Source: Mytilus californianus
Lineage: Eukaryota
Reading direction: 5' to 3'
NCBI RefSeq assembly: GCF_021869535.1
Contig: NW_026262701.1
Span: 18,786,001 to 18,850,000, forward strand
DNA: 64,000 nucleotides
Part shown: piece after piece, positions 37,037 through 64,000 of the stretch
Layout of the letters: every line of letters starts with the position of its first letter
Position numbering within the stretch: the stretch's first letter is position 1
Notes under the pieces: model-generated
Databases searched by the model: none
The model's input: the letters and a program-made list of their open reading frames with translations, nothing else
Told to the model about the DNA's origin: nothing
Translations under genes and position numbers: made by a program

Positions 37037-37185
37037 TTTTTGGTCCTCAAGGCTCTTCAACTTCGTACTTTATTTGGCCTTTGTAACTTTTTTGGATTCG
37101 AGCGTCACTGGTGAGTCTTTTGTAGACGAAACGCGCGTCTGGCGCAAATACAAAATTTCAATCCTGGTATCTATGATGAGTTTAT
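37037..37185 (+). mobile_element. 149-bp retrozyme-like family 1 insertion
   Basis: Flanked by CTA/CTA. Absent from the paralogous site GAGTGGCTTAGTAATGAC at 59461-59478. Confidence 0.8.
37102..37145 (+). ncRNA. Type-I hammerhead ribozyme motif, family 1, single core change (CTGATGA->CTGGTGA)
   Basis: GCGTCA-CTGGTGA-GTCT(TTTGT)AGAC-GAA-ACGCGCGT-C-TGGCGC. Stems I and II pair fully, stem III is palindromic, cleavage triplet is GTC. Confidence 0.85.
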
Positions 37186-42984: not shown

Positions 42985-43708
42985 GACCTGCTAGTCAAAC
43001 GCGTTTTGTTAAAATATACTTTTTCACTCATTTGGTCTTTTGAAAAATGTTGTTTCTGCTGTATTTAGACCCCTCTACCAAGAAATTTGTTTTGCATGCA
43101 CATGTATAAAAATGGCGGTTTTTATCCAACGCAATGATAGGTTTGAACGTTGTTTTCAGTTTAGACTTGTTTATATTTTTTCGTTTAAGCTTGTATTATA
43201 TTTGCCTTTGGGTTTTTATGATCCGTTCACCCTATTTTGACTCTTTCAAAATCCAAGAGTCTATCCTAAATTGAGGTAAATTATATGGCCTTCCAAATAC
43301 CGTTTCGATTCCTAACATAACTGAAGAGATATTTATTGTCGAAATCCGGATATGGTGTACACATTTTTACTCCTCATGTTTGCGGCATACCATCTTTTCC
43401 GCAAGTTTATTGTTTTCTGTTTGGTAATAAATTAATAATAAGATCTATTTTGTTACATCTTGTGATCCGTTTATTTGGCAATCGCCAATGGCAGTCAGCA
43501 GGGTTTAAGAACATCAGTTGTTCGACCTGCTTGTCAAATGCGTGTTGTTAAAATATACTTTTTCACTCATTTGGTCTTTTGGAAAATGTTGTTTGTGCTG
43601 TATTTAGACCCCTTTACCAAGAAATTTGTTTCGCATGCACACGTATAAAAAATGCGGTTTTTATCTAACGCAATCATAGGTTTAAACGTTGTTTTCAATT
43701 TAGACTTG

Positions 43709-43709
<1 letters not shown>
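42985..43709 (+). mobile_element. Retrozyme/pLTR-like element family 2: ~1.35 tandem copies of a 539-nt unit with one hammerhead
   Basis: 42985-43170 repeats at 43524-43709 (roughly 90% by eye). Hammerhead at 43315-43358. TA repeats at both ends. Confidence 0.7.
43315..43358 (+). ncRNA. Type-I hammerhead ribozyme motif, family 2, catalytic core intact
   Basis: ACATAA-CTGAAGA-GATA(TTTAT)TGTC-GAA-ATCCGGAT-A-TGGTGT. Cleavage triplet ATA, predicted cut after 43352. One A-G mismatch in stem I. Confidence 0.75.
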
Positions 43710-57800: not shown

Positions 57801-59935
57801 TTAACATTTGAAACTAGTTTACAGGTCAGATATAAAGCTAGCTTTTATCATCTATTAATGATAAGAATTGAATGGTTCGTTTATTATACTTTCATAAGGT
57901 TGTAAAAGCCTTGATGTTGAGCCCATTATAATGACGTGCTTACACACTAATAAAAAAAAAAAAAAAAAAAAAAAAGGCGGAAAATACCAAACGGACAAAA
58001 TATTTTACTCAACTTTAAAACATATAGCTTGATCTATACAGATTTGAAAAGGGACACATTATCATGAAAAGTCATTTTGTTTTACTCTTATTCCACTATC
58101 TGAAGTTTTAAATATAATGTTAGTTAACAAAATCGAGACTGGTCAACTTAAAATAGCTAAATACATTTGTTAGTATTATAAAAAGACACAAAAAAAAGTT
58201 TATATATGAATACAAAACTGTTTTCAGAGAAGATAGGAAGAGGCAATATAAACGTGTTTATTTAACGTTAGACACAATGGCATAAAGAATTACGCTGAAA
58301 AGACAATTTTTCGCAAAACAATACACAGAAAAACTATAAATTGAGCAACAATGAAAGGAGGTGTGGGTATATGTCAATGAGGCAGCAACCCAATGTCACA
58401 AATAACTAATAGACACCAGTAGTTCATCATGTAGTCTCAAACAAAAGTTGAAGATAACAGTGCCTTTATGTCAATATGCAGGTATATTTTGACAATCGGG
58501 TTACAATGAAATTAATATATATTTCTATGTTGTAATATTTTTCAAACACTATATGTTTTGTTCATTTATGCTGGTGACAAAAAATGCAAATGGTTTTCAT
58601 ATTTATTTTCTTTTGTAGAGACGAACAAATGTTGATTTTCGAGATATTCATTATATACTTCCACTTTATAAGAATCATTTTCAAAGAAAAAATTCATAAA
58701 ATACTGAGGTATCAATCAGTATAAATAAATCTCAGTACCAAGAATGTTGGGTTAACATTATTTTGACAGTAACCTCAAAGCCAACAAAAAACCCCAAAAA
58801 ATAAAACAAAGCTGTACACATCTATAAATATATATGAAACAAAAATAAAGAAAAACATTTTGTTGTCAGACATGTCAGAGCATTTTAAGACTGGTATTAA
58901 AAAAAAGAAAAAAAACTTTTAAACAATAAAAAACAAAGACAATAGAAGTGGCTTATTGTGTGCAATGACAACATTACTCTACAAATGTATAATACCATTA
59001 CAATATGAGTATAAACATACATGACACATACTTGTTTATTAACCGTAACAGTTTAGTTAGACATTACTATGAATCGTTTGGGGGCATGCAAGTTATTAAG
59101 ATTAAGAAAGAAAGACATGCAATAATAAGGAAACTTTACGTGAGGGAGTTGTATCCTTAAATATTGTACGATCATATTATTTATCTACCGAAATTGTTTT
59201 AATAGAATTTGTCCTTATAATCATACCTGTACCGAGGCACTGGCTACCGATCATGGGTTGCTGTTAATGCTTTACAGAGACTTAAAGGGACAATACTGTT
59301 CCAGTGGCAATACATAAATTTAAATGAGTGGTACAAATTTCCATCCATTTGATGTGTTTGAGCTTTACATAGAAATTAAATTTTTGGAGAAGGTATAATT
59401 CATTCAACTCATAATTGAAAAGCAAAGAAGAATAAAAAAATAAAAAGGGAGTGTTCACATGAGTGGCTTAGTAATGACTTTGGCAGCTGGGCGATATTCT
59501 AAGCAAAGATGATTGTCACTTATGTATCAACTATAAGCCAAATGGCAATCGTACTTCGACCATGTTTGCTAATATGTGTTAGAGTTATCTAGTTTATAAC
59601 TTTATTTGTTTGTAATTAACTGAACGTTGATTTGATACTAAAACATTCCAGAAGAAACAATCATATATATTTTCTCAATAAATTAAAAGTCTTACTGATA
59701 TATACAACACAAGTAGACAGGACAGATGACCGTATTTGATTTCGTAAAATGTTAACAATGATCCAAATTAGCTTGAAAGTCTATTTCGATATCTTTATGA
59801 ATAAAAATTATTATGCAGTAATTATAGTAATTGTAAGCGAATTTTTTGTTTAATCATTTGCAGACAAAATTCAATGGGAAAATGTACAAAAAGAAATGAA
59901 AATTTCTAATCGTTTTCAAATTGCCCGTGTCAGTA

Positions 59936-60383
59936 GGTTGCAATTCTGTAAATACAGACAAAGCAATTTCCCATAGGAACTCCCTTTGCGGCTAAAACTG
60001 TGACACTTTTACTATGAAGTTTCGTGAAAAATAATATCCCAGAACGGAAAGTTTATATGCACTACTATTTTATTCAAAGGTCAAAATATAGGGCTGTGCG
60101 GCATATTTTCAACATTTATATGCCCTGAACTTCTAAGAGTTTAAACTTATACTAAAATTCTATACTACCCTTACCTCCATTTTTGGACCTCCTAAGAATT
60201 AAAATTTAGCCGCTACCATGTTTTTCTATACTGGTTACATTCCCAAGTGATGTCTCTATGAGATGAAACACAGAGATCATCAATGGGAACCAGTACGTTA
60301 ACAAATTAACATACCTATGAATATTAAATATCTCCCCAAAAGAGGCGTGGTTTGAGAAACAGCTGTATTTACAAAGTGCAACC
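59936..60383. mobile_element. 448-bp TIR element (MITE), copy 1
   Basis: Starts GGTTGCAATTCTGTAAATACA and ends TGTATTTACAAAGTGCAACC. Flanks are AGTA (left) and TATA (right). Confidence 0.9.
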
Positions 60384-61619
60384 TATACAAACATTTATTC
60401 AAATAGAAAACTCTCTAAAACACTTTTTCTCACAACAATACTTATTTATCAGAATTATAGCCTTAAAGAAATCACTGCATATACACTAAGTCTCCTTTTA
60501 CAGTACATTTTATACCCCTACCCCTGTTTCAATTTTTTAAAGATTTTGAAAACAAGATTCTAATTATTGCCAGCTTACCCTATGTGCATGTTTTCTGACA
60601 TGAACTGTCTAAAACCTGTTTGAAACTATTCTGATAACAAATTGAAAGCATTTTAGAATACTATGAATGTATTGTTTAGTAGTTAAGCATTCCAACCTTC
60701 AAGATTATACAAAGTATCCAATCCTGCCTGTGTCTCCAGTCCACATCTTACTGTATGCCTTTTTGCCAATGAAAGTTCACAATTTCTGCCTCAAATGGTC
60801 AGTTTAGAATTCTTGTCACAACAGTATCATCCCTAACCATATATCTAACATAAGTTAGTTAATATATGTCCTAGAAGTGTTTAAACAAAGCCATATTTGC
60901 AAAAGTTGTATTGATGAAGATATCAGTCAGGTGCATAAATTCACTAAAAGTTTGATTGAAATGACTGCTTACATCTGATTTTTGCATAACTTCCTAGCAC
61001 AATTATTGTTTACTTTATAAAAGACCTTTAAAATAAAAAAATCATAGCATTTACAAGTTAAATTATCTGTTTTATGACTCAGGGGAAGGCATTTTCTCTG
61101 TTTTTTGCCCCTGGGGCCTCACATTTCCTAATTTTTTTCCCTGTTTCTAGCAATGTGGAATATTTACTACATATTTAGGATAGGACACACTATTGTAAGT
61201 TTTACTGAGGTCTTTTTGTAATTCTAGCTTGTACTTTTTTTATGCCGCAGTCACAAAAAAGCACATTTAGGCGTTACGGCTTACTTTTGGGTTATCGACA
61301 TGACAAAAACACCCCACCAGAAATATTTAGGAAGGATCAATGAGTTGCAATTACTGCGAAGAGTAAATATAAGCACTTCTAAACAATTTAAATTACAAAT
61401 AGGCATATATTATGAATTTATTTTGAATTCAGGGCTTTAAGTAAACCATGCATACTGTAAACTGTGAATTTATGCTGAGTCATCATAGTTAAGGCCCAGG
61501 ATTTTCTCAATCTTCATGAAATATTTATAAAACTTCATATTTGAGTTAAATTCTTTAAAATCTCTGAGATTAACCAGATTTTGTGAAATTCTGTATGTTC
61601 TATTTTTTAACCCTATATA

Positions 61620-62067
61620 GGTTGCAATTCTGTAAATACAGACAATGCAATTTCCCATAGGAACTCCCTTTGCGGCTAAAACTGTGACACTTTTACTATG
61701 AAGTTTCGTGAAAAATAATATCCCAGAACGGAAAGTTTATATGCACTACTATTTTATTCAAAGGTCAAAATATAGGGCTGTGCGGCATATTTTCAACATT
61801 TATATGCCCTGAACTTCTAAGAGTTTAAACTTATACTAAAATTCTATACTACCCTTACCTCCATTTTTGGACCTCCTAAGAATTAAAATTTAGCCGCTAC
61901 CATGTTTTTCTATACTGGTTACATTCCCAAGTGATGTCTCTATGAGATGAAACACAGAGATCATCAATGGGAACCAGTACGTTAACAAATTAACATACCT
62001 ATGAATATTAAATATCTCCCCAAAAGAGGCGTGGTTTGAGAAACAGCTGTATTTACAAAGTGCAACC
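61620..62067. mobile_element. 448-bp TIR element (MITE), copy 2, direct orientation
   Basis: Identical to copy 1 except one substitution found by eye (GACAAAGC/GACAATGC). Flanks are TATA (left) and AGTA (right). Confidence 0.9.
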
Positions 62068-64000
62068 AGTAAGTAGGTGGTATAATAAACTAACCTTTTT
62101 CCGTGTCTTTTCGAGTTATCAGTATTGAATGTCCCCATGGTATTTTCCGCCTCTTTTTCTTTCTTTTCATCTTTAGAAAAGAGAGGTGAAAGATACCAAA
62201 TCGATATTCAAACTCATATATGGAAATCAAACTGGCAAAGTCATGGCAAAAATATGAAAAACGACAAAAAGACAAACAAATATATATCGTTTGATCACTT
62301 TTCTGAGCTGACAGACACATACTTCCTGTATAATGCTACTTTTGAATTTTCAAAATGTTGACTGAACTTAAAATTTGTCGTCACACTTTTCTCAAATACA
62401 TCTTAACAGAAAAACCTTATATTTAGTCAACACCTTGGCTATGATGTGTTGTAATGAGTGAGTTCTTTATGGATACTTCCAAGATGTCGATACTTTGAAT
62501 TAAAACTAAGGGTAAGCTTATATATATAATTAGCACAATAACACGTGCAATTTCTTGATTGTCTTGATGTTTGACCTGTGTTCTTGTTCTGTTTCTGATA
62601 ACAAATATTATATAAAGTATTACTGCCTCAATATAGGAAGGTTTTCAATTATAGAGATTTACTATGAAGACCTTACATTTTTCATATATGACAAAACATT
62701 GTATAAAGAATTCTCATAGTTTGTAATGAAAGAAAAAGATGCTATGTAAATTTAGTGATATATATCAACTTTGTACTTGAAATAAAAGCATTAATAGAAC
62801 TCATGTTTATTTATGTTCAAGTGTGCGAAAAACTGCTTCGATGAGGGATATTTATTCGAAACACGAGGAAATGAGGCGTTTCAGTAAGATGCATGTAGAG
62901 TGACTAATGCACACGTAAGTTAAAATTGTCAAACACATTCCAATACTGTTTTATTAGATATAATTGTTAAGTACAAAATTATGTTTTTCTAGTTATGACC
63001 TTTTAATAAATAAAGGTGATACTCATGTAGATAAGAATTTTGCACCAACTTTTAAAAAATTGATAATAAATTACCATGATATGTTTAATTATTTTGACTA
63101 GTATTGTAAAAATAATTGTCAATTTTTTTATCTCGTTCCATATAATTGTATGAATTTCAAAATTATATATACGTCAAAAAAATACGTCACTTTTTGTGGC
63201 GTTGATCCGTTAATGTGACGCAGTTTGTGGCTCCTGTGCTGTCGTTAATTCATGGCAGATGTCTGGTGTTATTCTGCGGTTTACATTTTGTAATGTACTA
63301 TTATATAATTTATTTATGCATTTCTCTGTGCTGAGTGTTCTTGCGTTTGTTTGTACTGTATTCCTGTCACGTAGTGTTATCATTTTAGAGATATTTTTTA
63401 TCATTGCCATATAAGCGGGAGGTTTGGCAAGCCATATAACCATGTTCAACCCACCATTTGTTCTTAAAATGTCCTGTACCAAGTCAGGAGTATGGCAGTT
63501 GTTATCAAAAAGTCCGTTTCTATCTATGTTGGCGTTTTTTGTTGTTGCAGTTCAGTGTTTCTGTTGTTCCGTTTTTTCTCTTATATTTGATGTGTTTCCC
63601 TCGGTTGTAGTTTGTAACCCGGATTTGTGTTCTCTTAATCGATTTATGACTTTTGAACAGCAGTATACTACTGTTGCCGTTATCAAATTGTTTGTTACTT
63701 TGTCGGTGACAGCTATTGCTTTAAAATAATTTCTCTACATGTCTATTCAGAACATACATCTACTAAATTTAAGTTTCATTAAATTCTATTTGCATTTTGA
63801 TTATAAGTCTTGGATACTCGGCTACGGGTTTCAATGATCAACCCAACAGGAGGAAAAGGAATATTCCATACTTGAGAGTAATTCAAAACTGTTTTACTAA
63901 TAGACGTCAATTTCCAACTCCTGTGTTCGGAATGACTGTTGCTGTTGCCTATAGCAAGACATGAATTTCTACATATCGGGTTTAATCTATCGTGTCTTAA

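What the first reader, a model, noticed from the sequence alone, without database searches (positions are those of the whole stretch)
59932..62071. Composite or cointegrate-like unit: two near-identical TIR elements with swapped target-site duplications
Seen: AGTA-[448-bp element]-TATA-(1236 bp)-TATA-[448-bp element]-AGTA. The copies are direct and differ at one base by eye. Neither copy has matching 4-bp flanks of its own, but the outer pair match and the inner pair match. The anchor offsets in the paralogous region at ~37.5-37.7 kb leave no room for this 2.1 kb, so it is a later insertion. No TG..CA ends, PBS or PPT, so it is not LTR-like. Inference, two models: (a) a bacterial-style composite transposon in which two MITEs moved passenger DNA using their outer ends; (b) integration of a DNA circle carrying one element plus its TATA-flanked neighbourhood into a resident AGTA-flanked element, or a replicative cointegrate. 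Either would be a route for moving host DNA that is rarely documented in animals.
Basis: partly seen in the sequence, partly recalled or inferred. Interest (0 to 1): 0.8.

Follow-up and report, generated by a model that had tools for sequence, protein, structure and literature searches.

The report
Non-autonomous KolobokP transposon in mussel
The two repeats and the DNA between them are one copy of KolobokP, a "composite-like" DNA transposon family already described in bivalves, so this is a recent ordinary insertion and not a one-off capture of host DNA.

Summary
Two direct 448-bp TIR-bounded copies differ at one base, 1236 bp lies between them, and the flanks read AGTA/TATA/TATA/AGTA.

The 1236 bp is not host DNA. 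The same 448-1236-448 unit occurs at many loci in this 1.65-Gb mussel genome at 98-99.5% identity. Each copy has its own 4-bp target duplication and the same inner TATA...TATA.

The family also has solo 448-bp copies, TSD-flanked multimers of period 1684-1685 bp, and INT-INT junctions that share a single TATA. This is the KolobokP architecture (LTDR-INT-LTDR) published by Kojima & Bao in 2022.

A 4532-bp relative in the same genome has LTDRs that align end to end with the 448-bp repeat. It has the same TATA inner borders and a 4-bp TSD. [quoted passage not shown]

A contig from another individual carries the exact empty site with one AGTA, so the whole 2132 bp went in as one unit and is still polymorphic.

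The idea of a unique event that moved host DNA is not supported.

Two points go beyond the paper:
- Every inherited variant is shared by the left and right repeat of an element.
- 18 of 51 insertions carry the donor-type TATA on exactly one outer flank.

Both hint at a one-LTDR circular or concatemeric intermediate.

The parts
59932..59935 (.). Left copy of the 4-bp target-site duplication (AGTA)
   Evidence: The empty allele in run X3 has a single AGTA (table 8, record 9).
59936..60383 (+). Left long terminal direct repeat (LTDR), 448 bp, termini GG...CC
   Evidence: It aligns end to end (64% identity) with the LTDR of an autonomous-type KolobokP in the same genome. It resembles the published KolobokP-3_MyCo LTDR.
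59936..59957 (+). Left TIR of the left LTDR (about 22 nt)
   Evidence: Read from the sequence. It pairs with 60363-60383 with one indel and one mismatch.
60363..60383 (+). Right TIR of the left LTDR (21 nt)
60384..61619 (+). Internal region (INT), 1236 bp, non-coding, starts and ends with TATA
   Evidence: No ORF of 50 aa or more lies wholly inside it. There is no Rfam match. The same INT is found at 94-99% identity at many loci and in tandem arrays.
61620..62067 (+). Right LTDR, 448 bp, one difference from the left one (T at the position matching 59962)
   Evidence: The T is the family state, so the A in the left copy is private to this copy.
62068..62071 (.). Right copy of the 4-bp target-site duplication (AGTA)

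Best explanation
Window 59936-62067 is one 2132-bp 'monomer' (LTDR-INT-LTDR) of a young, high-copy, non-autonomous KolobokP DNA transposon family in a Mytilus-type mussel genome.

Shown:
- The whole unit inserted once into an AGTA target and duplicated it.
- The inner TATA...TATA are the constant borders of the family's internal region, not target duplications made at this locus.
- The insertion is still polymorphic among individuals.

Inferred:
- The element codes for nothing, so it must be moved in trans by the DDE transposase of autonomous KolobokP relatives, perhaps helped by their His-Me finger nuclease. One such relative in this genome has nearly the same LTDR termini.
- The two LTDRs of each new copy come from a single LTDR template. 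The likeliest route is a circular or concatemeric LTDR+INT intermediate. Fast LTDR-to-LTDR conversion is the alternative.
For: 1. Family. At least 16 other full 448-1236-448 copies were read whole, and more than 30 were read at both junctions. They are 98-99.5% identical. 31 insertions have perfect 4-bp TSDs of their own: TGTA 8, TATA 8, TTAA 4, TCTA 3, TAAA 2, TTTA 2, and TACA, TAGA, AGTA and AGAA once each. The left-end 24-mer occurs 333 times, mostly in pairs about 1685 bp apart.

2. Other forms. There are solo LTDRs with 4-bp TSDs, and trimers and long arrays that are bounded by LTDRs and TSDs, for example TTAA on both sides of the C99 and C110 arrays. There are LTDR-(INT)n-LTDR forms whose INT-INT junctions keep a single TATA.

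3. The paper. All of this is described for KolobokP: LTDRs of about 450 bp with their own TIRs, 5'-RR..YY-3' ends, 4-bp TSDs in the Mytilus families, an INT that starts and ends with TATA with one TATA at INT-INT junctions, solo LTDRs and multimers, and non-autonomous families of 1.7-3.3 kb (PMC9587614).

4. Autonomous relative, G000:C154:71149589-71154120. It reads TACA-LTDR(460)-TATA..INT(3612)..TATA-LTDR(460)-TACA. It has a 591-codon frame that hits PF20700 (E 2e-27) and a 153-aa frame on the opposite strand that hits PF05551 (E 9e-16). Its LTDR aligns with the window's over the full length, with identical terminal GGTTGCA and an identical last 17 nt. By eye it is nearly the same as the published KolobokP-3_MyCo LTDR.

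5. Empty allele. A contig from run X3 carries the exact empty site.

6. LTDR concordance. At all 9 LTDR sites with a lineage or private variant, the variant is in both LTDRs of every carrier. All 10 left/right differences are singletons. LTDR site 289 follows the subfamily split seen at INT sites 509, 714 and 778, and LTDR site 100 follows INT site 937.
Against: - No autonomous copy with an LTDR closer than about 64% to this one was found, so the trans-mobilising partner is inferred.
- The transposase frame was matched only to Pfam's 'Mutator-like transposase' model. Its placement inside Kolobok rests on the match of its LTDR to a published KolobokP family, judged by eye from machine-read supplement text.
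- The internal region shows no similarity to the autonomous INT, so its origin is unknown.
- 20 of 51 insertions lack a perfect TSD, which plain cut-and-paste does not predict.
Confidence: 0.93

Rival explanations
1. One-off composite transposon: two independent MITE insertions happened to flank 1236 bp of host DNA and moved it here using their outer ends.
For: The outer 4-bp TSD and the TIR-bounded repeats fit it. Other 2.1-kb copies with new TSDs exist.
Against: The 'passenger' is a constant part of a family with hundreds of copies. It forms arrays of its own. The same LTDR/TATA/INT/TATA/LTDR layout is found in an autonomous element that carries transposase and nuclease genes. The architecture is lineage-wide in seven animal phyla. 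Left and right repeats do not evolve as separate lineages.
Confidence: 0.02
2. Two-step origin at this locus: a solo LTDR first inserted at AGTA, and an LTDR+INT circle later recombined into it. 5b1 of the KolobokP paper.
For: It gives the same flanks. Solo LTDRs with 4-bp TSDs exist. The paper proposes such circles.
Against: The only alternative allele seen is completely empty, with no solo LTDR. A crossover would leave each lineage-specific variant in only one of the two LTDRs. Across the family, all 9 such variants are in both. Here the two LTDRs differ only by a private singleton.
Confidence: 0.03
3. Non-autonomous LTR retrotransposon (TRIM/LARD-like), copied through RNA so that both terminal repeats are regenerated.
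For: It has terminal direct repeats, a 4-bp TSD, solo repeats, tandem LTR-INT arrays, left/right concordance of inherited variants, and transcripts of the family in RNA-seq.
Against: There are no TG..CA ends, and no PBS or PPT next to the repeats on either strand. The repeats have 21-nt TIRs. INT-INT junctions with a single TATA look like excision or empty sites of a DNA element. The homologous autonomous element encodes a DDE transposase and a nuclease, not RT or integrase. RNA reads lie on both mates about equally, with no defined start or end.
Confidence: 0.015
4. Assembly artefact: a falsely duplicated repeat.
For: The family is highly repeated, and short-read contigs break inside it.
Against: The same 2132-bp structure is found at dozens of loci with distinct TSDs. 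The left junction is seen in an independent contig. The skip in the empty allele is exactly 2132+4 bp.
Confidence: 0.005

Closest known systems
KolobokP DNA transposons (Kojima & Bao 2022, Mobile DNA 13:24; PMC9587614), in particular the non-autonomous families and KolobokP-3_MyCo of Mytilus coruscus
   Same: - LTDR-INT-LTDR layout with LTDRs of about 450 bp that have their own TIRs and 5'-GG..CC-3' ends.
- 4-bp TSD.
- An INT bordered by TATA, and a single TATA at INT-INT junctions.
- Solo LTDRs and (LTDR-INT)n-LTDR multimers flanked by TSDs.
- A bivalve host.
- The LTDR shares conserved blocks with KolobokP-3_MyCo, and with that family's counterpart in this genome, which encodes the transposase and the His-Me nuclease.
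   Different: This 2132-bp family (448-bp LTDR, 1236-bp non-coding INT) is not in the paper's Table S1 as far as the held text shows. Its LTDR is only about 64% identical to the nearest autonomous LTDR found. Its INT has no detectable similarity to the autonomous INT.
Bacterial composite and pseudo-compound transposons (IS26 translocatable units)
   Same: Two directly repeated TIR elements flank a segment. A target duplication lies outside the pair. A circle with one element plus the segment would give exactly this product by copy-in cointegrate formation, with both element copies identical at birth.
   Different: The host is eukaryotic. The terminal repeats code for nothing, because the transposase sits in the internal region of the autonomous relatives. 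The architecture is a stable lineage trait rather than an opportunistic assembly. No circle or replicative step has been shown.
LTR retrotransposons / TRIMs, including the biv-TRIM of bivalves (PMC6934838)
   Same: Terminal direct repeats, a short TSD, solo repeats, tandem arrays that share a repeat, and near-identical repeats within a copy.
   Different: There are no TG..CA, PBS or PPT. The repeats have long TIRs. The relatives encode a DDE transposase. There are excision-like INT-INT junctions.
piggyBac and canonical Kolobok (TTAA-specific elements)
   Same: The TSD is 4 bp, with a T-N-N-A preference that includes TTAA. The excision-like junctions keep one copy of the 4 bp.
   Different: The target is relaxed (TGTA and TATA are the commonest). 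The termini are GG..CC, not CCC..GGG. The terminal repeats are long and direct.

Membership tests
KolobokP (Kolobok superfamily) | [quoted passage not shown] | tested here: met
   448-1236-448 bp, with the repeats differing at 1 of 448 bases. The same layout is found at many loci.
KolobokP (Kolobok superfamily) | Each LTDR carries its own short TIRs, and the termini are 5'-RR ... YY-3' | tested here: met
   The TIRs are about 21-22 nt and imperfect. The ends are GG...CC. The criterion is stated.
KolobokP (Kolobok superfamily) | TSD of 3-5 bp (4 bp in the Mytilus families) around monomers, solo LTDRs and multimers | tested here: met
   31 insertions have perfect 4-bp TSDs, including 5 solo LTDRs and 3 multimers. 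20 further insertions lack a perfect TSD.
KolobokP (Kolobok superfamily) | Multimers (LTDR-INT)n-LTDR and LTDR-(INT)n-LTDR, with 3-4 bp missing at INT-INT junctions | tested here: met
   Arrays of period 1684-1685 bp. Forms E-P-P-P-E and E-PPPP-E. The junction shares a single TATA. The paper describes the same thing.
KolobokP (Kolobok superfamily) | [quoted passage not shown] | tested here: met
   Element C154:71149589-71154120 has a PF20700 frame of 591 codons on the + strand and a PF05551 frame of 153 aa on the - strand. Both lie between LTDRs homologous to the window's.
KolobokP (Kolobok superfamily) | The transposase falls inside the Kolobok clade | tested here: inconclusive
   No phylogeny was run. 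Pfam gives only 'Mutator-like transposase'. Support is indirect: the relative's LTDR is near-identical, by eye, to the published KolobokP-3_MyCo LTDR.
LTR retrotransposon / TRIM | TG...CA repeat ends, a PBS after the 5' repeat and a PPT before the 3' repeat | tested here: not met
   The ends are GG...CC. The INT starts TATACAAACATT and ends TTAACCCTATATA. There is no TGG-type PBS and no purine tract on either strand.
Retrozyme (ribozyme-bearing repeat element) | A hammerhead or other self-cleaving ribozyme in the repeats | tested here: not met
   No ribozyme family matched up to E = 10 in 59700-62300. Nothing reached gathering score in the whole window.
Bacterial-type composite transposon / IS26-like cointegrate | The terminal elements are autonomous IS elements that encode the transposase, and the product arises by replicative cointegration | tested here: not met
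   The LTDRs have no ORF. In the relatives the transposase lies in the INT. The replicative step is not testable here; only identity of left and right at birth is suggested.

The most novel reading that the evidence does not exclude
The family's own variation may say how KolobokP copies itself, which the 2022 paper left open.

1. Every inherited LTDR variant is present in both LTDRs of an element, and only singletons differ between them.
2. In 18 of 51 insertions exactly one outer flank is TATA, the flank every LTDR has inside a donor. The bias is to the right end, 13 to 5.

Together these fit a cycle in which new copies come from a form with one LTDR template whose ends abut INT. That form would be an LTDR+INT circle or its rolling-circle concatemer, similar to an IS26 translocatable unit or an IS3-type circle junction. 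Four nucleotides of donor flank would sometimes travel with the element into the new site.

Probability: 0.3. Interest if true: 0.6.

Novelty: new member of a known kind. Interest (0 to 1): 0.3.

Why it matters
As flagged, a rare route for moving host DNA in animals, the finding does not hold up. It is a routine though recent and polymorphic insertion of a published transposon lineage that is common in bivalves.

Its value is as material. The family is young, abundant and non-coding. Monomers, solo repeats, multimers and excision-like junctions all occur in one well-assembled genome, alongside an apparently intact autonomous relative.

That makes the open question of how KolobokP builds and keeps its paired repeats testable from sequence and from circle sequencing. 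The candidates are cut-and-paste, a circular translocatable unit, and nuclease-induced conversion.

Tried and rejected
- **Retrozyme or ribozyme reading.** This was prompted by hammerhead notes on the same window. Rfam gave no ribozyme hit in the unit at E up to 10, and nothing at gathering score in the whole window.
- **LTR retrotransposon.** There are no TG..CA ends, PBS or PPT.
- **The 924-bp insert between INT and LTDR at C88:53.93 Mb as a related GGTTG-ended element.** It is an unrelated foldback element with a 9-bp TSD, TATAGGTTG. The shared GGTTG is just the duplicated start of the LTDR.
- **A 4151-bp LTDR spacing on C2 as a possible autonomous copy.** It is LTDR-(INT)3-LTDR.
- **An exact empty site from the paralogue at 37.2-37.7 kb.** The paralogue is too diverged at the site.
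- **A large fetch of whole arrays.** I worked from loci already held and from 56-71-bp junction fetches.
- **The published supplement.** I searched it for this family's termini and length. There was no exact match, and no 2132-bp family was listed.
- **Our-findings look-up by sequence.** It returned nothing.
- **Explanations for the one-sided TATA flanks that were rejected.** Carry-over of TATA followed by a normal TSD fails, because no TSD follows the TATA. Chance ectopic recombination between copies fails, because TATA is 26% of perfect TSDs, which makes 18 of 20 far too many.
Full report
**1. Observation**

- Copy 1 is at 59936-60383 and copy 2 at 61620-62067. Both are 448 bp, in direct orientation, and differ at one base (59962 A versus T).
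- Between them lie 1236 bp (60384-61619).
- The four flanks are AGTA, TATA, TATA and AGTA.
- Each copy has imperfect TIRs of about 21-22 nt and ends GG...CC.
- A repeat scan of 59-63 kb shows nothing else of note.

**2. The 'passenger' is not host DNA**

I searched the window's own genome (1.65 Gb; the window is C121:18786001-18850000).
- The 448-bp repeat gave 1919 first-look candidates. All 40 that were scored were near-identical and full length.
- The 1236-bp spacer gave 1739 candidates, with 94-99% identical full-length copies.
- In the fetched loci the two always sit together as 448-1236-448. They also form arrays with a period of 1684-1685 bp.
- The left-end 24-mer occurs 333 times, mostly in pairs about 1685 bp apart. 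There are also triplets, long arrays and some singles.

**3. Target sites**

I read both outer flanks of 51 insertions: monomers, multimers and solo repeats.
- 31 have a perfect 4-bp duplication of their own: TGTA 8, TATA 8, TTAA 4, TCTA 3, TAAA 2, TTTA 2, and TACA, TAGA, AGTA (the window) and AGAA once each.
- 29 of the 31 fit T-N-N-A.
- Five solo repeats have 4-bp TSDs.
- Arrays of about ten units on C99 and C110 are bounded by repeats and by TTAA on both sides.
- Where two spacers abut without a repeat, they share a single TATA (also seen in contigs of other individuals).

So the outer AGTA is the TSD of the whole 2132 bp. The inner TATA...TATA is constant family sequence.

**4. Identity**

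A literature search found the description of exactly this architecture: KolobokP (Kojima & Bao 2022, Mobile DNA 13:24; PMC9587614). The paper reports:
- each LTDR with its own TIRs and 5'-RR..YY-3' ends;
- TSDs of 3-5 bp (4 bp in the Mytilus families);
- solo LTDRs, (LTDR-INT)n-LTDR multimers flanked by TSDs, and LTDR-(INT)n-LTDR;
- for one family, an INT that starts and ends with TATA, with only one TATA at INT-INT junctions;
- non-autonomous families of 1.7-3.3 kb;
- a distribution across seven animal phyla, 'especially rich in bivalves', including Mytilus.

The published KolobokP-3_MyCo LTDR shares the termini and several blocks with the window's repeat (by eye).

**5. An autonomous relative in the same genome**

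The His-Me finger nuclease model PF05551 has at least 150 hits over its cut-off in this genome. Many lie in arrays with periods of 2.2-4.5 kb.

The best-scoring loci carry, right beside the nuclease frame, a full-length homologue of the window's repeat. It is 62-64% identical, aligns 1-448, and has the same GGTTGCA and TGCAACC ends.

I completed one such element, C154:71149589-71154120, 4532 bp.
- It reads TACA-LTDR(460)-TATA...INT(3612)...TATA-LTDR(460)-TACA.
- Its two LTDRs differ at one base.
- It has a 591-codon frame that matches PF20700 (Mutator-like transposase, E 2e-27 over its C-terminal 486 codons).
- It has a 153-aa PF05551 nuclease frame on the opposite strand.

This is the same 'swapped' flank pattern as in the finding, here in an element that carries the genes. 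The window's copy has no ORF of note, so it is non-autonomous. No family of this length is listed in the paper's table as held.

**6. Reads**

- Run labels point to a marine mollusc.
- A 1110-nt contig of run X3, from another study, joins 59930 to 62067 with nothing between. That skips 2136 bp, which is 2132 bp plus one AGTA. It is the exact empty site.
- Run X1 has an 88-nt contig across the left junction at about half the depth of the flank.
- The insertion is therefore real, entered as one unit, and is polymorphic.
- RNA reads of the family cover LTDR and INT on both mates about equally, without defined ends. That gives no support for a dedicated RNA intermediate.

**7. How new copies get their two repeats**

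Step 1, the comparison. In 16 full copies I compared left and right LTDRs.
- At all 9 sites with a variant that is private to an element or shared by a subfamily, the variant is present in both LTDRs of every carrier.
- All 10 left/right differences are singletons.
- LTDR site 289 follows the subfamily split seen at INT sites 509, 714 and 778. LTDR site 100 follows INT site 937.

Step 2, what this rules out.
- If both repeats were simply carried along by cut-and-paste, inherited variants would sit in one repeat only.
- If monomers were rebuilt by crossover between a circle and a resident solo repeat, variants would be split between the two repeats.

Step 3, what remains. The two repeats of a copy go back to one template. 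Either they are identical at birth, from a one-LTDR circle that integrates by a copy-in reaction or from its concatemer, or they are quickly homogenised, for example by nuclease-induced repair. The data do not separate these two. This step is inference.

A side result: INT collects private changes somewhat faster than the LTDRs. There were 50 such changes, where about 33 would be expected at the LTDR rate.

**8. Unexplained flanks**

20 of the 51 insertions lack a perfect TSD.
- In 18 of them exactly one side is TATA, the flank every LTDR has inside a donor. It is on the right in 13 and on the left in 5.
- The partner flank is TAAA in 7 (always on the left), TTTA in 5, TGAA in 2, and TTCA, TGCA and TTAA once each; in one solo LTDR the other flank was not read cleanly.
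- TATA is 26% of the perfect TSDs, so chance recombination between copies does not explain 18 of 20.
- No TSD follows the TATA, so simple carry-over followed by a normal duplication fails too.

One reading fits the paper's remark that excision removes a few flanking bases on one side only, as in IS3/IS256 circle junctions. Four donor bases may travel with one end and be ligated in when they nearly fit the target. I could not test this, because it needs the empty sites of those insertions.

**9. Verdict**

The unit is composite-like, it is a later insertion, and the 4-bp TSDs are real. But it is a member of a known lineage and not a one-off movement of host DNA.
- Novelty: a new member of a known kind.
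- The concordance of the two repeats and the one-sided TATA flanks are modest additions that bear on the lineage's unknown transposition pathway.

Noticed in passing
Family-wide; for example L034, L049, L053, L054, L008, and G000:C1:40862953-40865083: In 18 of 51 insertions of this family exactly one outer flank is TATA, the constant INT-side flank. It is on the right in 13 and on the left in 5. The partner is usually TAAA or TTTA. TGTA, the joint commonest target, never pairs with TATA.
   Followed up: partly
L025:577-1500 (G000:C88:53929566-53930489): A foldback-type element of about 915 bp with long inverted arms is inserted exactly at the INT/LTDR junction of one copy. It has a 9-bp TSD, TATAGGTTG, which is a Mutator-like TSD length.
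   Followed up: partly
G000:C154:57869528-57954194; C88:39608505-39677046; C154:49955633-49996719; C99:49331531-49371828: Long tandem arrays of His-Me finger nuclease frames, with periods of about 3.7, 3.7, 4.1 and 4.45 kb. They are probably multimers of several autonomous KolobokP families. The genome has at least 411 candidate hits.
   Followed up: no
window 1-64000 (notes at 42985-43709 and 37037-37185): Earlier first-reader notes call two hammerhead ribozyme families in this window. The Rfam scan of the whole window at gathering thresholds returned no match at all.
   Followed up: no
window 59508-62419: One contig of run X7 joins 59508 to 62419, a skip of 2910 bp, with only 28 nt on the shorter side. 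It may be another haplotype with a larger gap around the insertion site, or a repeat-driven misjoin.
   Followed up: no
window 62121-62214: An inverted-repeat hairpin just right of the insertion gives weak, sub-threshold hits to several miRNA precursor models on both strands (18-21 bits against cut-offs of 65-117).
   Followed up: no
window 60384-61619 versus the 15 other copies: The window's internal region has 11 private substitutions, while its two LTDRs have one between them. Family-wide, INT collects private changes about 1.5 times faster than the LTDRs.
   Followed up: partly
window 59300-59413: Read depth is hundreds of times that of the neighbouring unique flank, so another high-copy repeat ends there.
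   Followed up: no
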